Assembly: GCA_964035545.1 (NCBI GenBank)
Contig: OZ037769.1
Span: 5,933,929 to 5,997,928 of the forward strand
Origin: Bugula neritina
Taxonomy: Eukaryota > Animalia > Bryozoa
DNA: 64,000 bases
Direction: 5' to 3'
Shown in pieces: positions 38,398 to 49,324 of the stretch. The position numbers were made by a program, and so were the translations under genes. The notes beneath the pieces were generated by a model. That model did no database searches. It saw only the letters and a program-made list of their open reading frames with translations, and was not told the DNA's origin. Positions within the stretch are counted from its first letter, which is position 1. The number at the start of each line of letters is the position of its first letter.

Positions 38398-40555
38398 CTA
38401 CAGACATGCAATATATTCTATCATCACACTCGGAAAGGTAGGTCAGTCAGAAATAAAAGCTCAGTGCTTACGAAATAAACATTGAGCATAAACATATGTG
38501 TAAAGCTATAGACTGCACAATTATTTAGTAGAATATGAGGATGACAATGTTAGCAACAGAATATAAACTCACCATTTTAGAAAATTTCCAGAATTGAAAT
38601 CTGTCTTACGGCAGCAACAGGTATTATAGGGTGCTCTAAAAATCCAGTAAATATCGTTAGAAGTAGTTATAAACATATAATTTGTCAAAAGAAGTCAATG
38701 CTTATGTATAACTTTAATCTTTATTACAGAAATAACAGTATTTCACTAAAGTTTTCTTCAAAAGAAGCTGTATAATAATTTTTGTAAAATAAGCACTAGC
38801 ATGTCACCTTTTAACTATCTAAATAACAAGCTTTTAGGTTGTATAACTTTTGAGAAATTAATAATACTAATAATTTACTTTGATATAATAATATAAATTA
38901 ATAGGATTAGGAGTAAAAGTAATATGTAAACTAAATTATATATTTACCAGCAAAAACTGCTTTGTCTAGTAATGATTAGCTTCTGTTTGAATATCTTGCA
39001 ATACTAAATTGATTGTTGAAAAATATTGTCAGAGTATGTTTTCTCTACCCGACCTGACGATCAACTGAAGCTGGTTCTCTCTGGCAGAGTATTTGTACCA
39101 TTTTACCATCTCGTGTTTGTGATTATTTTATTTGCTACGTGCTCCAATACCATGAGGTTTCAGCCACTTGAAAAAATTATTCGTTACTTTAATTAATCAA
39201 ATTCCATTTCAAAGAAATAGGCTAAATGCCTAACTATGGTAGTGCTCATTTTAAGGGATGGGCACATGCCAAACCAGTTTCAATCAAGCGGAGAACTTGA
39301 AGTTAAGCTATATGAATATATTAGTATATATATATATATATATATATGTATTGGATACTGATTTATCCACACGTGCGCTATAACAGAACAATAAACATTG
39401 TTATGCAATACCAATTTGCAACATGTTTACTAATATTTCAGGTTTTTGTTAAGAAATAAATGCTAACAAATTTGCTCAAACTATGATGTCATATATAACC
39501 CAGTTGTTGACTCACAGCTTAAGGATTTTCATTTGCTTTATTTGCTGCATCTGGAAATTTTTGCAGCCTGACTGTGAATTTCGTAAAGTTATAATATTAA
39601 ATAACATCTTTGACATAGCTTATGTTGACTGAAATCTTCAGTCACTCACCATTTTGTATCATTAGAAAACTCAATGAGATCTACTCTTTCTTTCCAGTGA
39701 AATAATGTTCCATGACACAGGAAGACGAAGTGCACAAGAATGGCACAATTTAATTTTAAGGCATGTTATATTTTCATCACATTTTTTCCTAATGTCCTGA
39801 TGATATTTTTTAGTCTGTTCAGTTTTTTTTATATAATTATATAGGTTTTAGTATGCAGAAAACCTTTTATTATAGGTGTTATAGGTATAAATTTCATAAA
39901 CAAAACAAACCGTCACGCGAAAAACAATGCCACAACCTCTTAAGTACCTTTAGTTAATTGATATAAGGTCAGCAAAACTTGGTTCTTAGTCAAAATTGAA
40001 AATTAAAATTAAAAAACTGTTTTTGTCAGATCAAGGTCATGGGAGATTTGATAAAAATTTTAAACCAAATGCAAACTGGAAATCAAAAGTCTTGAATTTT
40101 CAGTAAACAACACTGCTTAAAAGTAAGTATTATATAACATTGCATGTAGCACATCTATGCGTTAATCTCCTCCTAATTGTATGCATCCTACACTTCCTAA
40201 AGTGTATTTTAGAATTGGCACACTGTTGTATGGAAATTGCTAATTTTAATTCTGTTGGCCTCATCTCTATTGAACAGGTTATTAGCATAACGCGACAACG
40301 CCCCATTAATGTTAATTGTGTCAATTGTGTACAATAATTAGCATATAGTGTGTTGGTAGGTGACAACTACAAGCCATCATCTCAGGCTCCCAGACGAGTT
40401 CTCCCCTGGTATTAAATATATTCTATGCATACCTTACTCTCTGTACTCTCATTATTCAAGGGGCCCATGATTCATTGTTTACAAGCTCTCGTGCTAAACG
40501 AGATAAGTTTCTGTCTGCTGCAATAGTTTTGAAACTTTTTACGTAAGAGGCTTGC

Positions 40556-40648
40556 TGTTGAGCAAGGTCTCGCCACAAAAATGGTTTTGGTACGGACTGA
40601 GAAGAAGTTTTAACAAATCTCTCACTTTTATTAATTTTCTTCTAAATC
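40556..40648 (-). repeat. 93-bp inverted copy of the LTR 3' end (R-U5)
   Basis: Exact reverse complement of 41295-41387 and 48568-48660. Confidence 0.95.
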
Positions 40649-40687
40649 AGTTTAGTTAATTTCCCTGAGTGAAATTAAAGGGGGGAG

Positions 40688-41387
40688 TGTAAAGGATCTA
40701 ACAAAGAAGCATGATAGCCCTTGTTACAAATACCACTAGAACTTTTATTTTTAGCCTTTAATGGTGATATTTGTTATTATTAGATAGTTCATTCTCCTGT
40801 GCAGCAGTCAGCTGCCTAATAATAGGTAAAGCCTAACCGCCACCTTTGTTGAAGTCAGCTTTTAGGGTTTGACAGGAACTGATCCATCTTCCTTTATGAG
40901 GTCATTACATGTGCCCCATAGTTAGCTGACCATAATTATAGCTAAATTTAGATGTAATTACCTTTTCTTTGTGATTGCCCTGGTATTTAAGGCAGCATTG
41001 AAACTCCAAAAAGACAGTCACTCATGTAGCCTAAGCTGAGCTACTTATTTTGTTAAGTTAAGTGACAAAGAGCTAAATTTTGAAGATATTATAGCAAGCT
41101 CGTCAAGAGAATAAAGGTATTTTATTATTATTCTTTGCTATTTTTAACTTGATAATGCTTTATGTCTTTTGTTACAATTTTTATTGCTGTTATATTTTAA
41201 TATTATATCGTGATGTTTGCTGGTATTTGAACAACTGTATTGTATGAGTTTTAGCACACCTATATGTATTCTTTATGTTACTTGTAGTTTTTACGATTTA
41301 GAAGAAAATTAATAAAAGTGAGAGATTTGTTAAAACTTCTTCTCAGTCCGTACCAAAACCATTTTTGTGGCGAGACCTTGCTCAACA
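40688..41387 (+). repeat. 5' LTR (700 bp)
   Basis: TGTAAAGG...CTCAACA; identical by eye to 47961-48660. Confidence 0.95.
40984..41020 (+). promoter_or_regulatory. Putative LTR core promoter (TATA-like plus Inr-like)
   Basis: TATTTAA at 40984-40990 and CAGTC at 41015-41019 (A at +32 from the TATA T). LTR poly(A) signal AATAAA at 41311-41316. Confidence 0.5.
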
Positions 41388-41931
41388 GTAAAAACTTTAT
41401 CTCAAGTGGTGAAGCAGTAAAGCGCTGCTTCCAAGTGGTGGTGAGAGAATAAAGATTCCTTTCCAAGTGGTTGTGAGAGTCGGCAGTGAAGTCCTCGTCT
41501 CCAACTAGAGATAGCAGTCCGTCAAGTTCCATTTCGCAGCATTTTCCCTACTACCTACCCACTCCTTTCCAAGAAGTCGTACCTTCAGCCAAGAGGACAA
41601 TTTCAGCATTAACATTAACATTTCATTTGGAATTAATTGAAACCTCCATTCATTCCGGAAGTAGAAGAAGGGGTGAGCAATTATATTCTTAAATACCAGG
41701 CAATCTAGGGCTTATAGTAACTTAGTATAGGAGTATTATTTGGTCCCTTTGTTGTATTGCATGTGATGACCTTGCATTGAGGGTGAGGTCGGTTCCTTGT
41801 TAATTGTTGAAATTAATTAGTTGGCATTTTCTGGTGGTGTTAGGTTGATGAATTCATAGGTTAGGAAAATTGCTTAGTAATTACTTGACAAATTAGTTGT
41901 AACGTTTTAAGTGGTGTTTGAAACAAAAATC

Positions 41932-44900
41932 ATGTCTTCTATACATAGTGGTAGCCGCATTTCTGAAACTAGGAAAAGTAGCAGAACTAGGGGTTTATCT
42001 GAAAAGGCTCAAGAAAATGAGCTGGTAAAAGGATTAAAGTCTGTAAATTCTTGTATCCGTAAATTTAACAAGCTGTTGAAAAGTCAATCAGTTAATAATC
42101 CAGAAAATATTTCTGAGATGCAAAGCGCAGTTTTAGAAGCTCAAACCGAGCTGCATGTTCTTGGCAATTTACCAACTAGCAGTAGTAGTGAAGATCTTAG
42201 TGAGGTAGCTAAGCAAGTAGAAACAATGGCTAAAGTTCTTGAATCTATGCAAAAAAGTATTGAAATTGATCAAGGGCAACACAGTGCCTCACCTCCTCTT
42301 GAAGTTCAAAGCCCTAAGCATTCAACTAAGGCTAGTAGCATTTCCGCTAAAAGTAATAGGTCAATTCGAGTGGTTAAGAATAAACTTGCAGCAGCAAATG
42401 TTGATATAGAGTTAGAAACTTTAAGAAAGCAAGCACAGTTGAAAGCACAAATAGATGCAATGCAATTAGAATTGCAAGCTAGCGAATTAGAAGCTAAAAA
42501 GCAAAGAATTATGGTTAGGCGTGACGTATTAGAAGAATATGATGTAGATGAGAGGGAGGAAATAGAAGACGCTCTTGATGTAATTTCTTTGCATGGCGAC
42601 CCAATCATTCCTCCTCTCGAAAGAGTAGCTGTAGGTGAAAATTTGAATGTTATAGCACCTAGTTTAAACAATGAGCATCCAGCAATAGGTAACGGGCAGT
42701 CTTTGAGCAGTAAAAATATCAGTGATATACATGTCCTTGCAGATTCTATAACTAAAGCTATGCATGTAAATCGTCTCCCCATACCTGAACCACCAGTTTT
42801 CTGTGGCAACCCTCTTGAGTATGCTGATTGGGAAATTTCCCTTAGAACTCTTATTGAGAGAACTAATATTCCTGAATCTGATAGAATTCATTATTTGAAA
42901 AAATATGTGGGAGGTAGTGCAAGGGAGGCAATTAGTGGATATTTCCTACTAAATTGTGATGATGCATATTGTAAGGCAAAGGAAATTTTACGTGAACGTT
43001 TTGGTTCTAGCTATACAGTAGCTGAATCCTTTAGAACAAAACTAAATAATTGGCCTAAGATCAAACCTCATGACAGAATTTCTATTCAGAAATATTCAGA
43101 TTTCTTGTGCCAATGTGAAGCTGCCATGCTTAGATTTGATGAGTTAAATATTCTCAATGATTCCCAGCAAAATAAATCCATGTATGAAAAACTTCCTGAC
43201 TGGATGTCAAGTAGGTGGAAAAGGAAGTTAACGCAATTTAGAAAGGCAAATGGTGCTTATCCAAAGTTTGGCTTGTTTGTAGAGTTTGTAAAAACTGAGT
43301 CTGATATTATTAATGACCCTGTGACAGCTAGTGTGGACCATGCTGATAGGATAGATGCTAAAAGACCAATAAGCAGCAGTTATAGTAAACCAGTGGCTAA
43401 CACACGTGTAACTTCTCTTACATCAAGCAAGCACTGTATATTTTGTGACATGAGTAACCACGAAATTGATGAATGCTTCAAGTTTGGCAAGTTGTCAGTA
43501 CATGAAAGAAAGCAGTATGCAAGTAGATATAGGCTTTGTTTTCAATGCCTTAAGGCAAATCACATCAAGGCTCAATGCAACAAAGTATGTATCTGCAAAA
43601 AATGCCAAGGCAAGCACCCCACTAGCATGCATTATGGTAGTACACGTGACAATGCAGGGAATATTGGAAGGTCTCCGTCTAATAGTGGAAGTTATACCCA
43701 AAATGATGGTCATTATAGTAGCAAAGTTACTAGCAAAAGCAGTGTAACCAATGATAAAGGAAATGTAGCATCAAACATAGATAGTGCTAGCAATGCAAAC
43801 AACTGTAGTACTGTAAGAGCTAATTCTGGCCTGAGTTCCATGGTAGTGCCAGTCTGGCTGTGTGATGCAAGTGCACCCAAAAAGGAAATCTTGGTATATG
43901 CTATGCTTGATACCATGTCTGACACTACCTTTATTACAACTCAAGCAGCAGATTGTTTAAATGCACCAGGTGAAGCAACCTCATTAAAACTTACAACTAT
44001 GAATGGCACTAAAAGCTCAAATGAATGCTGTAGGTACAGTGGTTTGATGGTTCGTGGGTATAACAATGCTGACAAAATAGCTATTCCTTGTGCATATTCA
44101 ACTAAAGTTATTCCCCTTGACAAGTCACATATTCCATCTGCCAAAGTAGCAAATGCATGGCCTCATTTGCAGCAAATAGCACATGAATTCCCAAGTCTTG
44201 AAAATGTACCAGTTTCTATGCTAATTGGTTATGATGTGTCTAAAGCACTTATGCCACAGCAGTTAATAGTAGGATCTCATGACACTGACCCATTTGCTGT
44301 TAGAACACCTCTAGGGTGGTGCATTGTGGGAAATACCAGCTACCCTGGCAGTAAGCAATTTAGCACGTGCTGTAGGACAGTAACCTTGACCAATGAGCAT
44401 GCATGCAAAAATGAACAGACAGCTGTAACCTTTGATTGTGCTACTGCAAACTCAAGCAAGCAAATATTGCCTCAAAATGTACTTGAATTGCTACTGCAAG
44501 ACTTCATGGAAAATCAAACTAGAGCATGCACAACTATGTCACAAGAAGATAAGCTATTTGTTTCCAAATTAGAAGCAGGTATTGAGCAAAATGAAGGGGG
44601 TTATATCACCATGCCTTTGCCATTTAAAACTGATGCCAAGCCCTACCTACCCAATAACCGCTTGATGGCTGAAAAGCGACTTGAGTCACTTAAGACTAAA
44701 CTTAGCAAGAATGAGCACTTGAAGCAGGATTATTTAAAATTCATGAATGACGTAATTGATGCTGGTGATGCTGAGCTAGTGCCAGAGTGTGAAAAATCTC
44801 AAAACAACAGTACATGGTACATACCACATTTTGGTGTCTATCACCCCAAAAAACCAGGGAAAATCCGAGTAGTTTTTGATTGTAGTGCTAAATATGCAAA

Positions 44901-47865
44901 CTTGTCTCTCAATGACCATCTTATTCAGGGCCCTGACCTAATGAATAGGCTGGTAGGTGTTCTACACAGATTTAGAAAAGGCCAAGTAGGGATTATGTGC
45001 GACATACAGAAAATGTTCCACATGTTCAAAGTTCACAAAAATGACAGAGACTACCTTCGGTTTTTATGGTACACTGATGCTAGTTTAACAAAAGTAGCAG
45101 AGTACAGAATGACTGTACATTTGTTTGGTGCGACATCTTCACCAGGATGCGCCACCTTTGGTTTACGTTACCTGGCAAATAAAAATCACGATGCAAACGA
45201 TGAACACAGTGTTAGAGCTAAAGATTTTATAATCAATGATTTCTATGTTGATGATGGATTATTGAGCTTAAATTCAGTAACAGACATGGCCAATGTAATT
45301 TCTCAAGCAGTGGATCTTTGCAAAACAGGAAATATTAGGTTGCATAAGTTTGTAAGCAACAGTACACAGCTCCTAGATACAATACCAAATTCAGAAAAAG
45401 CTGAAACAATTAAGGACTTGAATTTGAACACAGGCAACAGTGTTCTGCCCATGGAAAGAGCATTAGGCATTAAATGGTGCACGCAGTCTGACAATTTTAA
45501 ATTCTCAATGAATCTCAAACAAATCGAGCCAGCTACAAAGCGTAGAATTTTGTCAACAGTAGCATCTTTATTTGACCCTCTAGGCTTCTTATCTCCTTTC
45601 ATACTGTGTGGCAAAAAGATTTTGCAATCTATATGTAAAGATGGGACAACATGGGATGCCCCAGTAAATGAAGATGTTAGTGCTCAGTGGCTCTCCTGGA
45701 AACATGAATTTAACATGCTAGACAATGTAGCAATACCTAGATGCATATATCCTGCTAATTTTGATACAATTGTGAAAACTGAGCTGCATCACTTTTCAGA
45801 TGCTAGTGCAATAGGTTATGGTCAATGCTCCTATATCAGACTTGTAAACAACCATGGTGATGTTCATGTTGCTTTGCTTAGCGCTAAATCCAGAGTAATT
45901 CCATTGAATAAGTCAGTAACCATACCTCGGGCTGAACTACAAGCAGCTGTAATGTCTGCAAAATTGGCTGATTCTCTTAAAGCAGATCTTAAAATTGAAA
46001 ATATCACAGATGAAATATTTTGGACAGATTCAAAAGTTGTTCTAGGCTACATAACCAATGAGGTAAAGAGGTTTCATGTTTATGTTGCAAATAGAGTGCA
46101 ACAAATTAGAGATCTTAGTACACCTAACCAATGGCAGTACATTAACACACAATCTAACCCAGCTGATATAGCATCTAGGGGAATTTCATCTATTGCCAAG
46201 TTGCTAGATTCCTGTTGGTTCAATGGGCCTGGCTTTCTACACGAGCCAGATTTGACTCACATGCTAACCACTCGGAACAAATTTGATATTGCTAGTGATG
46301 ACCCAGAGGTCAAAGCCACCACACATGTTGTTGCAGTAAATGACCTCAGTAAATCATGGAATGAGAAATTCAAAGCTTTCTCTAGCCTCTCATCAGCTGT
46401 TAGAGCAATTAGTACACTACAAAAGATAGCTAGGGCTAAATGTAAACAAACCAAAACCACAGTTATGTCAGATGTGGCATCAACTGAAAAGGCAAAGATG
46501 CAAATTTTAAAATGGGCTCAAATGGAGTTCCTAGCTAATGAACGCAAGGAAATTAAGGCTGGAAAAGTTACCAAGAGTAACAAAATACTTAAACTTGACC
46601 CATTTACTGATAAAAATGATATGCTAAGAGTTGGGGGAAGACTAAAAAATTCAAGCCTTGCCTATGGTGAAAAGCACCCTATTATTTTGCCAAAAAAGTC
46701 TCACATCACTAAGTTAGTAGTTGACCACTGTCACAAACAAGTAATGCACCAAGGTCGAGGGATGACAATTGCTCAAATTCAAAATTCAGGCTATTGGATT
46801 TTAGGCTGTAATTCTTTGGTCTCCTCTCAAATAGCTAATTGTGTCACATGTAGGAAAACACGAAGTGCACCAGAGATTCAAAAAATGGCAGATTTACCAT
46901 CTAAACGAATAGAACCAACCCCTCCATTCACATATGTAGGCAGTGATTGTTTTGGCCCATTTGTTGTTAAGGATAACAGAAAAGAATTGAAAAAATATGG
47001 GGTTATATTCACATGCATGGCTTCTAGGGCTATTCACATTGAGTTAGTGGACGATTTATCTACTGATGCCTTTATAAATGCATTGCGCTGTTTCATAGCT
47101 ATTAGAGGGCCCATCAGACAATTACACACTGATAGGGGAACTAATTTTATAGGTGCTGCTAATGAGCTAGCAAGTGTTGCAAAAGAAGCAACTAGAAAAA
47201 TTGAAAGCTTTTCTGAAAGTAATAGCTTCGAGTGGGTTACAAACACTCCCCACTCAAGTCACATGGGTGGTGTCTGGGAGCGCCACATAAGAACAATCAG
47301 GTCTGTCTTAAACTCAATGCTAGCTATAAACAGCACAAGGCTAGATACTAGTACACTGCGGACTTTATTATATGAGGTAATGGCAATAGTTAACTGCAGG
47401 CCACTAATATCTCAAACAGATGAAAGTTACCCAATGCCACTAACTCCCAACCAACTATTAACTATGAAGTCCAAAGTAGTGTTGCCTCCTCCTGGTCAAT
47501 TTGATGAACAAGATGTATACTGTAGAAAACGTTGGAGAGTAGTTCAAGGGTTGGTAAATCAATTTTGGAAACGTTGGCGCACTCATTATTTGCAACAAAT
47601 TCAATCCAGGCCAAAATGGTTGAAAAGGGCTGCTAACATTGCTGTGGGAGATGTAGTACTTTTAGTTAGTGATGACAAAAACAGGCGAGATTGGCCATTA
47701 GGCAGAGTAGTGGAAGTATTTCCTAGTGATGACAACTTAGTTAGGAGAGTTAGACTTAGCATAGCTGATGCAGAAAAGTTAGACAGAAAGGGTAGAAGAA
47801 TAAAATCAGAAACACAGCTTGAGAGGCCAATTCAAAAACTAATCTTCTTGTTTAGGCCCTCCTAA
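41932..47865 (+). CDS. BEL/Pao Gag-Pol polyprotein (~1977 aa from first ATG)
   Basis: Uninterrupted ORF. Gag PEPPVFCGNPLEYADW, three Cys/His knuckles (CIFC..H..C, CFQC..H..C, CKKC..H..H), protease MLDTMS, RT YVDD, RNase H FSDAS / PRAELQAA / WTDS / NPADIASRG, integrase HHCC plus DCFGP / TDRGTNF / WERHI, C-terminal FWKRW. Domain order PR-RT-RH-IN. Confidence 0.97.
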   Translation: MSSIHSGSRISETRKSSRTRGLSEKAQENELVKGLKSVNSCIRKFNKLLKSQSVNNPENISEMQSAVLEAQTELHVLGNLPTSSSSEDLSEVAKQVETMAKVLESMQKSIEIDQGQHSASPPLEVQSPKHSTKASSISAKSNRSIRVVKNKLAAANVDIELETLRKQAQLKAQIDAMQLELQASELEAKKQRIMVRRDVLEEYDVDEREEIEDALDVISLHGDPIIPPLERVAVGENLNVIAPSLNNEHPAIGNGQSLSSKNISDIHVLADSITKAMHVNRLPIPEPPVFCGNPLEYADWEISLRTLIERTNIPESDRIHYLKKYVGGSAREAISGYFLLNCDDAYCKAKEILRERFGSSYTVAESFRTKLNNWPKIKPHDRISIQKYSDFLCQCEAAMLRFDELNILNDSQQNKSMYEKLPDWMSSRWKRKLTQFRKANGAYPKFGLFVEFVKTESDIINDPVTASVDHADRIDAKRPISSSYSKPVANTRVTSLTSSKHCIFCDMSNHEIDECFKFGKLSVHERKQYASRYRLCFQCLKANHIKAQCNKVCICKKCQGKHPTSMHYGSTRDNAGNIGRSPSNSGSYTQNDGHYSSKVTSKSSVTNDKGNVASNIDSASNANNCSTVRANSGLSSMVVPVWLCDASAPKKEILVYAMLDTMSDTTFITTQAADCLNAPGEATSLKLTTMNGTKSSNECCRYSGLMVRGYNNADKIAIPCAYSTKVIPLDKSHIPSAKVANAWPHLQQIAHEFPSLENVPVSMLIGYDVSKALMPQQLIVGSHDTDPFAVRTPLGWCIVGNTSYPGSKQFSTCCRTVTLTNEHACKNEQTAVTFDCATANSSKQILPQNVLELLLQDFMENQTRACTTMSQEDKLFVSKLEAGIEQNEGGYITMPLPFKTDAKPYLPNNRLMAEKRLESLKTKLSKNEHLKQDYLKFMNDVIDAGDAELVPECEKSQNNSTWYIPHFGVYHPKKPGKIRVVFDCSAKYANLSLNDHLIQGPDLMNRLVGVLHRFRKGQVGIMCDIQKMFHMFKVHKNDRDYLRFLWYTDASLTKVAEYRMTVHLFGATSSPGCATFGLRYLANKNHDANDEHSVRAKDFIINDFYVDDGLLSLNSVTDMANVISQAVDLCKTGNIRLHKFVSNSTQLLDTIPNSEKAETIKDLNLNTGNSVLPMERALGIKWCTQSDNFKFSMNLKQIEPATKRRILSTVASLFDPLGFLSPFILCGKKILQSICKDGTTWDAPVNEDVSAQWLSWKHEFNMLDNVAIPRCIYPANFDTIVKTELHHFSDASAIGYGQCSYIRLVNNHGDVHVALLSAKSRVIPLNKSVTIPRAELQAAVMSAKLADSLKADLKIENITDEIFWTDSKVVLGYITNEVKRFHVYVANRVQQIRDLSTPNQWQYINTQSNPADIASRGISSIAKLLDSCWFNGPGFLHEPDLTHMLTTRNKFDIASDDPEVKATTHVVAVNDLSKSWNEKFKAFSSLSSAVRAISTLQKIARAKCKQTKTTVMSDVASTEKAKMQILKWAQMEFLANERKEIKAGKVTKSNKILKLDPFTDKNDMLRVGGRLKNSSLAYGEKHPIILPKKSHITKLVVDHCHKQVMHQGRGMTIAQIQNSGYWILGCNSLVSSQIANCVTCRKTRSAPEIQKMADLPSKRIEPTPPFTYVGSDCFGPFVVKDNRKELKKYGVIFTCMASRAIHIELVDDLSTDAFINALRCFIAIRGPIRQLHTDRGTNFIGAANELASVAKEATRKIESFSESNSFEWVTNTPHSSHMGGVWERHIRTIRSVLNSMLAINSTRLDTSTLRTLLYEVMAIVNCRPLISQTDESYPMPLTPNQLLTMKSKVVLPPPGQFDEQDVYCRKRWRVVQGLVNQFWKRWRTHYLQQIQSRPKWLKRAANIAVGDVVLLVSDDKNRRDWPLGRVVEVFPSDDNLVRRVRLSIADAEKLDRKGRRIKSETQLERPIQKLIFLFRPS

Positions 47866-47949: not shown

Positions 47950-47960
47950 AAAGGGGGGAG
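47950..47960 (+). other. Polypurine tract (second copy at 40677-40687)
   Basis: AAAGGGGGGAG abutting the TG of the LTR. Confidence 0.9.
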
Positions 47961-48660
47961 TGTAAAGGATCTAACAAAGAAGCATGATAGCCCTTGTTAC
48001 AAATACCACTAGAACTTTTATTTTTAGCCTTTAATGGTGATATTTGTTATTATTAGATAGTTCATTCTCCTGTGCAGCAGTCAGCTGCCTAATAATAGGT
48101 AAAGCCTAACCGCCACCTTTGTTGAAGTCAGCTTTTAGGGTTTGACAGGAACTGATCCATCTTCCTTTATGAGGTCATTACATGTGCCCCATAGTTAGCT
48201 GACCATAATTATAGCTAAATTTAGATGTAATTACCTTTTCTTTGTGATTGCCCTGGTATTTAAGGCAGCATTGAAACTCCAAAAAGACAGTCACTCATGT
48301 AGCCTAAGCTGAGCTACTTATTTTGTTAAGTTAAGTGACAAAGAGCTAAATTTTGAAGATATTATAGCAAGCTCGTCAAGAGAATAAAGGTATTTTATTA
48401 TTATTCTTTGCTATTTTTAACTTGATAATGCTTTATGTCTTTTGTTACAATTTTTATTGCTGTTATATTTTAATATTATATCGTGATGTTTGCTGGTATT
48501 TGAACAACTGTATTGTATGAGTTTTAGCACACCTATATGTATTCTTTATGTTACTTGTAGTTTTTACGATTTAGAAGAAAATTAATAAAAGTGAGAGATT
48601 TGTTAAAACTTCTTCTCAGTCCGTACCAAAACCATTTTTGTGGCGAGACCTTGCTCAACA
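47961..48660 (+). repeat. 3' LTR (700 bp)
   Basis: Directly follows the PPT AAAGGGGGGAG and is followed by the TSD. Confidence 0.95.
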
Positions 48661-49122
48661 CTTGCTAAGGCATCATCGAAAGATAAAATCAATTACAAAA
48701 TATCAATTACCTTAAAACATGTACAAGGATCATTTTCATTGAAAAATTTATTTTTATGTTGTCATGAGTGTTGTCATAACAAATTTTTCATTTGAACGAA
48801 TCAAAAGTTGAAAAAGTTAGGGTGTTGGAGATTAGCGATCTATAGTACACCTTTGTGCAGCCAAAAATAAAAGCTATTAACATGTTATTACAATTAGATG
48901 TGTAACTCACTAAGGCCAGCTATAGCAAAACATCAACACTGCAACTATGTAAACTACAGTTGCTATAAAATGCTGTACATGTTAATGACACTAGTAAAAT
49001 TCATCACGTACTTGAAACTATACAACTGTCAATTGCTATGTCTTTTGATAAGTTTCAGTGCCAAAAATTATATATTCTAGAAGTTTCCTGGCAAGTACAA
49101 AATGATTAAACAAGTTAAACAA

Positions 49123-49324
49123 ACTGGTACAGAAGCTGGTGGTCATATGGGTACTTCTGTAGCTGTGACCAGATCTGGTACAGAAGCTGGTGGTCATATG
49201 GGTACTTCTGTAGCTGTGACCAGGACTGGTACAGAAGCTGGTGGTCATATGGGTACTTCTGTAGCCATGACCAGGACTGGTACAGAAGCTGGTGGTCATA
49301 TGGGTACTCCTGTAGCCGTGACCA
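49123..49324. repeat. 51-bp minisatellite, 4 copies
   Basis: Unit CTGGTACAGAAGCTGGTGGTCATATGGGTACTTCTGTAGCTGTGACCAG(AT/GA). Confidence 0.92.

What the first reader, a model, noticed from the sequence alone, without database searches (positions are those of the whole stretch)
41111..41403. BEL/Pao element with no tRNA PBS: candidate self-priming site completed by a splice junction inside the LTR
Seen: the 5' LTR (ends 41387) is followed by GTAAAAACTTTATCTC, not the TGG needed to pair with a tRNA CCA end. Its first 9 nt are the exact complement of AGTTTTTAC inside the LTR (41286-41294). Removing the GT-AG segment 41117-41287 gives the junction GAGAATAAAG|TTTTTAC, which pairs with 41388-41400 over 13 contiguous nt (16 with one bulge). 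C41294 pairs with the first base after the LTR, so a 3'-OH there would start DNA synthesis exactly at the LTR's last base. Established: Tf1-type chromoviral elements self-prime by annealing their own 5' RNA to the PBS, followed by RNase H cleavage; BEL/Pao elements are generally described as tRNA-primed. Inference: this element self-primes from an internal, splice-assembled primer, which would couple splicing to reverse transcription. I do not know of a description of this, but cannot check the literature.
Basis: partly seen in the sequence, partly recalled or inferred. Interest (0 to 1): 0.92.

Follow-up and report, generated by a model that had tools for sequence, protein, structure and literature searches.

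The report
Splice-built self-primer in BEL/Pao retrotransposons
This retrovirus-like jumping gene appears to start copying itself with a piece of its own RNA instead of a host tRNA, and the matching sequence is completed only when an intron inside its terminal repeat is spliced out; relatives in bryozoans, echinoderms and a fish share the design, with matching changes on both sides.

Summary
The 5' LTR (40688-41387) is followed by GTAAAAACTTTAT, not TGG. Its first 9 nt complement 41286-41294. Joining exon end 41116 to 41288 lengthens the match to 13 nt, or 16 with one bulge.

- Contigs of two runs (probably RNA) carry the 41116^41288 junction.
- Ten further BEL/Pao elements were examined: two more families in this genome, Watersipora, a sea urchin, a sea cucumber, a fish and environmental contigs. 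All start this complementarity at or within 2 nt of the LTR boundary.
- In nine of the ten the complementary 6-7 nt follows a 3' splice site. The core has compensatory variants, and each exon-1 end fits its own post-LTR sequence best (11 of 200,000 permutations).
- The sea cucumber LTR, and two 5' LTRs of a sister family here, carry the joined form as DNA.
- This copy's left end is an inverted copy of exactly 41295-41387, inside the 5-bp target duplication. That is the strong-stop DNA predicted for a cut after C41294.

Not shown: the transcription start, the cut itself, the primer-cDNA junction.

I rate self-priming about 0.85 and the splice-dependent version about 0.6. First-reader notes of this scan record the same idea elsewhere in this genome. 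No published description was found.

The parts
40551..40555 (.). Left copy of the 5-bp target-site duplication CTTGC
   Evidence: Identical to 48661-48665. All other copies of the family show target duplications at their LTR ends, 5 bp in all but one pair.
40556..40648 (-). X': inverted copy of 41295-41387, read as a fossil minus-strand strong-stop DNA
   Evidence: 93 nt, 100% complementary to the 3' LTR copy. It is the only such inverted copy in the genome. It lies inside the target duplication.
40645..40687 (+). Extra copy of the 43 nt that precede every 3' LTR, including the polypurine tract AAAGGGGGGAG (40677-40687). AATC (40645-40648) is shared with X'.
   Evidence: absent upstream of the other 5' and solo LTRs, present upstream of all 3' LTRs.
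40688..41387 (+). 5' LTR, 700 bp, TGT...ACA
40984..41019 (+). Predicted promoter: TATTTAA (40984-40990) and initiator ACAGTC (41014-41019, A41016 as +1)
   Evidence: Motifs read. A similar TATA box lies about 80-250 nt upstream of the donor in most relatives (read by eye for the fish; none was found in L080). Contig depth rises at about 40980-41040 in X10. Not mapped.
41016..41116 (+). Exon 1 of the leader (start predicted, end observed). 41111-41116 ATAAAG and 41107-41109 GAG pair with the post-LTR sequence.
41117..41287 (+). 171-nt GT-AG intron inside the LTR
   Evidence: Joint in contigs of X5 and X10. All 21 genomic LTRs of the family keep it.
41288..41294 (+). Primer tail TTTTTAC, the first 7 nt of exon 2. 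The proposed 3'-OH is at C41294.
   Evidence: Complement of 41388-41394. Conserved or compensated in 10 relatives.
41295..41387 (+). Loop between primer and priming site, and template of the 93-nt strong-stop DNA. It holds the effective R (AATAAA at 41311-41316) and U5.
   Evidence: Equals X' in reverse complement. Contig depth falls after about 41340. A poly(A) signal lies 1-119 nt after the primer in all relatives, 13-64 nt in most.
41388..41403 (+). Primer-binding site for the element's own RNA: 13 contiguous nt (41388-41400) plus CTC (41401-41403)
   Evidence: Identical in 7 full copies except one C/A difference at position 16.
41911..47865 (+). gag-pol reading frame (1984 codons) of BEL/Pao type
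   Evidence: Pfam: Peptidase_A17 1e-47, DUF1759, Integrase_H2C2, DUF5641.
47961..48660 (+). 3' LTR, preceded by the polypurine tract at 47950-47960
48661..48665 (.). Right copy of the target-site duplication CTTGC

Best explanation
The element is a BEL/Pao LTR retrotransposon that primes its own reverse transcription.

1. Transcription starts in the LTR near 41016 (predicted).
2. The 171-nt intron 41117-41287 is removed from the 5' copy of the LTR sequence (junction seen in contigs).
3. The last nucleotides of exon 1 plus the first seven of exon 2 then lie next to each other. They fold back onto 41388-41400(-41403), directly after the LTR, closing a 93-nt loop.
4. A cut after C41294 leaves a 3'-OH. 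This is inferred by analogy with the RNase H cut in Tf1.
5. Reverse transcriptase extends that 3'-OH and copies 41387 back to 41295 into a 93-nt minus-strand strong-stop DNA.
6. That DNA moves to the same sequence at the RNA's 3' end, upstream of the poly(A) site after AATAAA 41311-41316, and synthesis goes on.

Everything upstream of 41295 in each new LTR, including the intron, is copied from the 3' LTR region of the RNA, where the intron stays unspliced. Splicing of the 5' leader therefore leaves no trace in the progeny.

The same design is used by a clade of BEL/Pao elements in several animal phyla.
For: Shown:
- There is no TGG after the LTR. The complementarity is anchored at the first post-LTR base, and splicing lengthens it from 9 to 13 nt.
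- The junction 41116^41288 is present in contigs of 2 runs, at depth 272 against 105-141 for intron contigs in X5.
- The same anatomy occurs in 9 further intron-bearing elements. These are families F2 and F10 of this genome, two Watersipora elements, three environmental contigs, a fish and a sea urchin.
- Core variants TTCTTAC/GTAAGAA, TTTCAT/GTGAAA, TTTGAC/GTCAAA, GTTGAAC/GTTCAAC and TTATTAC/GTAATAA keep the pairing. In the swap test the true pairing is the single best of 720.
- In every intron-bearing element the GT site whose exon end best extends the pairing is unique (one of two tied sites in L072). These sites look like splice donors (GTGAGT, GTACGT, GTATGT, GTAATG...). Own-versus-swapped test: 11 of 200,000.
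- Window versus F2 show two double compensatory changes.
- The joined form exists as natural DNA. It is contiguous in the Holothuria LTR (11-nt match, about 170 nt downstream of the predicted start). It also occurs in the 5' LTRs of F2 copies L045 and L057, whose 3' LTRs keep the intron.
- The left end of this copy is an inverted copy of exactly 41295-41387, placed inside the target duplication.

Inferred: the site and agent of the cut, the transcription start, and the strand-transfer details.
Against: - No raw reads were available, so no transcription start, RNA end or primer-cDNA junction was seen.
- The junction contigs have only 28 letters on the shorter side, and the runs' RNA nature is the tool's guess. 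My argument for RNA is that 37-50 Mb of contigs is too little for DNA of a 216-Mb genome at the depths seen.
- The junction was found in only 2 of the 4 runs.
- The 9-bp core forms without splicing. In this element the unspliced RNA is predicted to make an alternative extended duplex of -10.4 kcal/mol, against -11.0 for the 13-bp spliced one.
- In some relatives splicing adds only 1-2 bp beyond the AG (per-element P of 0.2-0.4 for three of them).
- A primer of roughly 108 nt leaves open what stops plus-strand strong-stop synthesis.
- The inner boundary of X' has a 4-nt ambiguity (AATC) and rests on a single event.
- Host tRNAs, including mitochondrial ones, were not compared directly.
Confidence: 0.62

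Rival explanations
1. Self-priming as above, but the working primer is the unspliced 9-bp pairing (41286-41294 with 41388-41396), or either form works. The intron serves another purpose such as expression or export, and the junction complementarity adds little.
For: The 9-bp core is identical with or without splicing, because both exon 1 and the intron end in AG. The unspliced RNA folds into this stem with a predicted extended duplex of -10.4 kcal/mol. The extension beyond AG is short in several relatives.
Against: The exon-1 end covaries with its own post-LTR sequence. Intron-less natural forms place exactly these nucleotides together. The extra unspliced pairing of this element is not seen in F2.
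Confidence: 0.2
2. The pairing is a structural or regulatory RNA helix, for example controlling use of the LTR poly(A) site, packaging or dimerisation. Reverse transcription is primed by something else.
For: Retroviral leaders have U5-leader helices around the priming site (established knowledge). The loop holds the poly(A) signal in a hairpin.
Against: The helix starts at the first base after the LTR in 10 of 11 elements, and 1-2 nt after it in the other. Only a primer explains that position. No alternative priming site with TGG is present. X' ends where the helix begins.
Confidence: 0.07
3. Tf1-type priming in the strict sense. A second start site at A41286 makes an RNA whose first 9 nt fold back on the priming site. 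Splicing is unrelated.
For: A weak TATA-like TATATG (41262-41267) lies 24 nt upstream of A41286, and A+T-rich TATA-like strings lie about 25 nt upstream of the AG in several relatives. Tf1 and Tj1 use the mRNA's 5' end (PMC4600332).
Against: - The AG is always preceded by a pyrimidine tract and is used as a 3' splice site here.
- In Holothuria the contiguous primer has no TATA nearby and lies about 170 nt from the predicted start.
- F2 5' LTRs with exon 1 fused to exon 2 show that reverse-transcribed RNA began upstream of exon 1.
- The covariation of the exon-1 end is unexplained by this rival.
Confidence: 0.05
4. A host RNA (a tRNA fragment, a mitochondrial tRNA or another small RNA) ending in ...AGUUUUUAC is the primer. 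The LTR copy of that sequence is coincidental.
For: Host tRNAs could not be compared directly. The window holds no tRNA gene.
Against: Five different core variants in different hosts each have their own complement in their own LTR, at the same place. A run of five T would terminate RNA polymerase III inside a nuclear tRNA gene (established knowledge). There is no TGG for a CCA end.
Confidence: 0.03

Closest known systems
Self-primed Ty3/gypsy elements of the Tf1/sushi group (Tf1, Tf2, Tj1, Maggy, Skippy, Cft-1, Boty; Lin and Levin 1997, cited in PMC6934838 and PMC4600332)
   Same: There is no tRNA-type priming site. The sequence directly after the 5' LTR is complementary to the element's own RNA upstream in the LTR. 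A cut at the end of that duplex would give the 3'-OH. The duplex length is similar (11 bp in Tf1, 10-13 bp here).
   Different: The superfamily differs (BEL/Pao). The primer segment is not the 5' end of the RNA but lies about 100 nt or more inside it. It spans an exon-exon junction, so an intron inside the LTR must be removed to complete it.
Predicted self-primers in plant Tcn1 (Ty3/gypsy) and TAR (Ty1/copia: Houba, Osr-1) lineages (PMC6317226)
   Same: [quoted passage not shown]
   Different: No intron or splice junction is involved there, and no BEL/Pao elements. That screen needs a contiguous complement of at least 10 bp, so it would miss this 9-bp genomic match.
Penelope-like elements that keep a spliceosomal intron near the transcription start (PMC2377424, citing Arkhipova et al. 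2003)
   Same: A retroelement carries a functional intron in its terminal or promoter region and keeps it through transposition. Most transcripts are spliced.
   Different: Penelope-like elements are not LTR elements and prime on the target DNA. Their intron has no proposed role in priming.
Half-tRNA priming of copia-type elements and ordinary tRNA priming of LTR elements
   Same: The priming site abuts the 5' LTR.
   Different: No complementarity to a CCA end. The T-run makes a nuclear tRNA source implausible. The partner sequence sits in the element itself and covaries with it.

Membership tests
BEL/Pao (Belpaoviridae) LTR retrotransposons | Pao-type aspartic protease and a pol of this lineage | tested here: met
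   PF05380 Peptidase_A17, E 1e-47. The nearest proteins all carry PF05380, PF03564 and PF18701.
BEL/Pao (Belpaoviridae) LTR retrotransposons | gag of DUF1759 type and an integrase with zinc-binding domain and DUF5641 tail, in the order gag-protease-(RT)-integrase | tested here: met
   DUF1759 at residues 297-436, A17 at 1209-1374, Integrase_H2C2 at 1599-1652 (just under the curated cut-off), DUF5641 at 1873-1979.
BEL/Pao (Belpaoviridae) LTR retrotransposons | Direct LTRs with TG..CA ends, a polypurine tract and a short target duplication | tested here: met
   700-bp LTRs with TGT..ACA ends, AAAGGGGGGAG before the 3' LTR, target duplications at all copies (5 bp in all but one pair).
Self-primed LTR retroelements (Tf1 type) | No priming site complementary to a tRNA 3' end | tested here: inconclusive
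   No TGG after the LTR. The host tRNA set could not be fetched, so this is excluded by argument only.
Self-primed LTR retroelements (Tf1 type) | The first bases after the 5' LTR are complementary to the element's own RNA within the 5' LTR | tested here: met
   Ten relatives show the same, with covariation.
Self-primed LTR retroelements (Tf1 type) | The primer is the very 5' end of the mRNA (first 11 nt) | tested here: inconclusive
   Promoter motifs, the spliced junction and exon1-exon2 fused 5' LTRs place the start about 100 nt or more upstream. The start itself was not mapped.
Self-primed LTR retroelements (Tf1 type) | RNase H-dependent cut of the RNA duplex creates the primer 3'-OH | not testable with these tools
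   Only indirect: the inverted 93-nt left end stops at the complement of G41295, within a 4-nt ambiguity.
Self-primed LTR retroelements (Tf1 type) | Phylogenetic membership in the Tf1/sushi chromovirus group | tested here: not met
   The pol is BEL/Pao. It works like Tf1 but is not a member of that group.

The most novel reading that the evidence does not exclude
In a whole clade of BEL/Pao retrotransposons (bryozoans, echinoderms, fish) splicing is an obligatory licensing step for replication. Only an RNA whose 5' LTR intron has been removed, while the identical 3' copy is retained, can assemble the primer helix and be cut and copied. A possible extension is that the post-LTR GTAAAA motif also acts as a pseudo 5' splice site, which would make splicing and poly(A)-site bypass specific to the 5' LTR.
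Probability: 0.4. Interest if true: 0.92.

Novelty: new variant of a known kind. Interest (0 to 1): 0.85.

Why it matters
- Priming of reverse transcription is a defining step of every LTR retroelement. Self-priming has been shown or predicted only in Ty3/gypsy (Tf1/sushi, Tcn1) and Ty1/copia (TAR) lineages. This would add the third superfamily, BEL/Pao.
- It would also add a new principle: a primer that exists only after splicing. That links the host spliceosome to the choice of which RNA is copied.
- It explains how an intron can persist inside an LTR. Everything upstream of the cut is inherited from the unspliced 3' copy.
- It explains why annotation tools find no priming site in these elements. 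tRNA-based searches fail, and searches for contiguous self-complementarity of at least 10 bp miss a junction-spanning match.
- The natural intron-less LTRs and the fossil strong-stop DNA give rare direct records of replication intermediates.

Tried and rejected
- Mechanical LTR borders were wrong by 43-51 nt and were corrected with other copies.
- A nested insertion as the origin of X' is rejected. The sequence after the 3' LTR is the flank with the same CTTGC, not the rest of an inverted LTR.
- DNA search with the leader 41388-41950 found only the 7 copies of this family, so relatives had to be found by protein.
- Related solo LTRs at 73-88% identity (L022-L030) keep TGTAGTTTTTAC but have no internal part, so they gave no covariation test.
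- ARAGORN finds no tRNA in the window. Rfam gives no credible hit in 40400-42000.
- The fold of 41280-41410 is not more stable than shuffles (z = -1.5).
- A first swap test was biased because donors had been chosen by pairing. It was redone taking the best of all GT sites for every LTR/priming-site combination.
- An Aedes element at 28% identity shows no anchored complement, so the design is not universal in BEL/Pao.
- The sequence joined to exon 1 in one X10 contig is not in the window.
- Literature searches found no BEL/Pao self-priming and no splice-dependent primer. The library is incomplete, so this is not proof of novelty.
- I did not build, fold or search the joined exon1-exon2 sequence. 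Pairing across the junction was scored exon by exon, and the joined form was read only where it occurs naturally (L045, L057, L079).

Full report
THE OBSERVATION

The window holds a full-length LTR retrotransposon. Its single long reading frame (41911-47865) has the BEL/Pao signature: Peptidase_A17 at E 1e-47, DUF1759, Integrase_H2C2 and DUF5641.

The two LTRs are virtually identical. Comparison with 20 other LTRs of the family in the same genome fixes their borders at 40688-41387 and 47961-48660, with TGT...ACA ends and target duplications that are 5 bp in all but one pair. The polypurine tract AAAGGGGGGAG precedes the 3' LTR.

After the 5' LTR comes GTAAAAACTTTATCTC, with no TGG. AGTTTTTAC at 41286-41294 is the exact complement of the first nine bases. 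41117-41287 begins with GT and ends with AG.

I scored the pairing exon by exon. ATAAAG (41111-41116) adds six contiguous pairs to the seven of TTTTTAC (41288-41294). After a bulged A41110, GAG pairs with CTC. Of 40 GT sites in the LTR, no other adds more than two. On its own, a nine-base anchored complement arises in about 1.2% of shuffles of this A+T-rich LTR.

RNA EVIDENCE

Only assembled contigs of public runs were available. Laid on 40500-42299, contigs of two runs from two studies carry a joint that skips 171 bases with GT..AG ends. This is equivalent to 41116^41288. Its depth is 272 in X5, against 105-141 for contigs inside the intron, and 48 in X10.

Caveats:
- The shorter side of the joint is 28 letters.
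- The tool only guesses that these runs are RNA.

I consider RNA likely. The runs total 37-50 Mb of contigs, while the depth on this roughly 7-copy element would imply a fully assembled 216-Mb genome if they were DNA.

No genomic LTR of this family lacks the intron. Contig depth rises near 40980-41040 and falls after about 41340. That fits a start at the TATA/initiator pair (40984-40990, A41016) and polyadenylation after AATAAA (41311-41316). Contigs cannot prove either point.

THE LEFT END OF THIS COPY

Upstream of the 5' LTR lie two extra segments:
- The 43 nt that normally precede only the 3' LTR, polypurine tract included (40645-40687).
- Before them, a perfect inverted copy of 41295-41387 (40556-40648).

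CTTGC flanks the whole (40551-40555 and 48661-48665), so the integrated DNA really began with this inverted segment. It is unique in the genome.

The segment is exactly the minus-strand DNA expected if synthesis starts opposite A41387 and the template ends at G41295. My reading is that a free 93-nt strong-stop DNA annealed by its last four bases (AATC) 43 nt upstream of the polypurine tract and primed the plus strand there. This gave a left end that mimics a U5 end.

The inner border has a four-base ambiguity, and this is a single event. I found it independently.

RELATIVES

Protein searches in the same genome and in public data gave ten further elements with usable LTR ends. Their LTR borders were fixed by solo or 3' LTR hits, or by LTR pairs with target duplications.

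| Element | Source | Protein identity |
|---|---|---|
| F2 | this genome | 39% (gag) |
| F10 | this genome | 45% (gag part) |
| L072, L073 | Watersipora subatra | 51%, 48% |
| L074, L080, L081 | environmental contigs | 59%, 42%, 32% |
| L076 | the fish Acanthochromis | 45% |
| L075 | the sea urchin Lytechinus | 42% |
| L079 | the sea cucumber Holothuria | 41% |

A TARA contig (L078) has the same post-LTR sequence, but its LTR is not on the contig.

In all ten, the bases directly after the LTR are complementary to a stretch 46-204 nt upstream of the LTR end. In L081 the complementarity starts 1-2 nt further on.

Six elements, counting the window, share TTTTTAC/GTAAAAA. The others have TTCTTAC/GTAAGAA, TTTCAT/GTGAAA (one G-U pair), TTTGAC/GTCAAA, GTTGAAC/GTTCAAC and TTATTAC/GTAATAA. 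Both sides have changed together. When LTRs and post-LTR sequences of the six variants are swapped, the true assignment is the single best of 720.

A host primer cannot explain this. A mere structural helix would have no reason to begin at the LTR border.

THE SPLICE JUNCTION IN THE RELATIVES

In nine of the ten relatives, the complementary 6-7 nt follows a pyrimidine tract and AG. In each, the GT site whose upstream bases best continue the pairing is unique (L072 has two tied sites). These sites look like real splice donors (GTGAGT, GTACGT, GTATGT, GTATGC, GTAATG, GTTAGT...). They lie about 80-250 nt downstream of a TATA box, which in several elements has a GTATA(T)AAG-like form, and give introns of 93-404 nt.

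The continuation is 3-6 nt including the AG. The contiguous duplex is then 10-13 bp.

The donors were found through the pairing, so I tested fairly. For every LTR and every post-LTR sequence I took the best of all GT sites. The true assignment is reached by 11 of 200,000 random permutations, and by none of 14,833 derangements with eight elements.

Between the window and F2, two positions differ on both sides (T:A to A:T, and A:T to G:C).

THE JOINED FORM AS NATURAL DNA

- The Holothuria LTR has the eleven complementary bases contiguous. There is no intron and no nearby TATA, and they lie about 170 nt downstream of the predicted start.
- Two F2 copies (L045, L057) have 5' LTRs in which the predicted intron is missing to the base, with exon 1 fused to TTTTTAC or TTTTTAT. 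Their 3' LTRs keep the intron.

The F2 copies show that the F2 intron is spliced at the predicted sites. They also show that RNAs with a spliced 5' leader and an unspliced 3' LTR were reverse transcribed. That is the combination the model needs.

A plausible route (inference): the minus strand, after an intermolecular first jump, ran to the capped end of an uncut, 5'-spliced co-packaged RNA.

MECHANISM

The anatomy is constant:

promoter, exon 1, intron, 6-7-nt primer tail, short effective R with AATAAA, U5, LTR end, priming site.

The steps that follow are inferred:
1. The spliced leader folds back on the priming site.
2. A cut after the last paired base, as in Tf1 (PMC4600332 and references there), gives the 3'-OH.
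3. The short strong-stop DNA transfers to the 3' R.
4. All LTR sequence upstream of the cut is copied from the 3' end of the RNA, which explains how the intron is inherited.

Open points:
- The start site.
- The nuclease.
- Whether priming acts in cis or in trans.
- What limits plus-strand copying of a primer of roughly 108 nt.
- How the 3' intron escapes splicing. One idea is that its terminal exon is very short, and that the post-LTR GTAAAA, present only after the 5' LTR, may act as a pseudo donor. This is speculation.

The unspliced RNA can form the 9-bp core and, in this element, an alternative extended duplex of similar predicted stability. Splicing may therefore improve priming rather than be strictly required for it.

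COMPARISON WITH WHAT IS KNOWN

Self-priming is established for Tf1. It is predicted for the Tf1/sushi and Tcn1 groups of Ty3/gypsy and for the TAR lineage of Ty1/copia (PMC4600332, PMC6934838, PMC6317226). In those the primer is the RNA's 5' end and is contiguous in the DNA.

Introns retained by retroelements are known from Penelope-like elements (PMC2377424), without any link to priming.

I found no mention of self-priming in BEL/Pao or of a junction-spanning primer. The library lacks many subscription papers, so an earlier description cannot be excluded.

The element works like Tf1 but is not a member of that group. Two first-reader notes of this scan (s1-472012, s1-472023) record the same idea on other pieces of this genome. 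They are unchecked notes, not independent support.

VERDICT

- Observation: confirmed.
- Interpretation: supported. I put self-priming with a 3' end at C41294 at about 0.85, and the splice-assembled version at about 0.6.
- Novelty: a new variant of a known kind of mechanism, conserved across phyla.
- Interest: high.

Noticed in passing
window 40551-40687: The left end of this copy is an inverted 93-nt copy of 41295-41387 plus a second copy of the 43-nt polypurine-tract region, all inside the CTTGC target duplication. It reads as a fossil of a strong-stop DNA that mis-primed the plus strand.
   Followed up: yes
L045 and L057 (G000:C5:13969340-13970548 minus strand; G000:C4:9437742-9438225): Two copies of the sister family F2 have 5' LTRs that lack the predicted LTR intron to the base, while their 3' LTRs keep it. 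These are natural processed LTRs.
   Followed up: yes
window 41444-41454 versus 41106-41116: The 11 nt AGAGAATAAAG at the end of exon 1 recur in the leader 57 nt after the priming site. This copy could pair with 41395-41403 and compete with the primer. F2 has a similar purine stretch in its third leader repeat.
   Followed up: no
window 41388-41480; L046 875-960; L073 after the 5' LTR: The leaders begin with 25-37-nt tandem units. In F2 and in one Watersipora element the priming-site motif itself is present twice in tandem. The motif CAAGT recurs in every unit of the window and F2 leaders.
   Followed up: partly
L079 and L068-L070, between primer tail and LTR end: Short tandem repeats sit directly after the primer tail: a 12-nt unit about 7 times in Holothuria, and a 14-nt unit about 6 times in F10. 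As a result the loop length varies widely (46-204 nt) between elements.
   Followed up: no
L004 and L018 (G000:C6:12713478 minus strand and C6:12688401 plus strand): A 5' LTR and a 3' LTR that share the target duplication GATAG lie 25 kb apart in opposite orientation. This suggests an inversion or rearrangement through one insertion.
   Followed up: no
window 41117 (run X10, loose ends): One contig joins the end of exon 1 to unrelated sequence that is not in the window. The LTR donor may also splice to other acceptors, for example in LTR-driven chimeric transcripts.
   Followed up: partly
window 41299-41387 (runs X1, X10): An 89-nt contig with exactly these limits occurs in two runs. A graph branch after 41328 would fit a poly(A) site 12 nt after AATAAA. 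This was not verifiable.
   Followed up: no
L068 (G000:C7:4449300), 5' LTR: This F10 copy has lost 44 nt including the LTR acceptor and primer tail. L069 has TTTTTAT, which gives a terminal G-U pair. The same C-to-T change occurs in three LTRs of the window's family (L011, L018, L021).
   Followed up: partly
window 49072-49324: Four to five tandem copies of a 51-nt unit lie downstream of the element (family D2).
   Followed up: no
whole window /: The nearest named proteins come from the bryozoan Watersipora subatra (48-51% identity). One run holding the element is labelled a symbiont metagenome. The host is probably a bryozoan.
   Followed up: no
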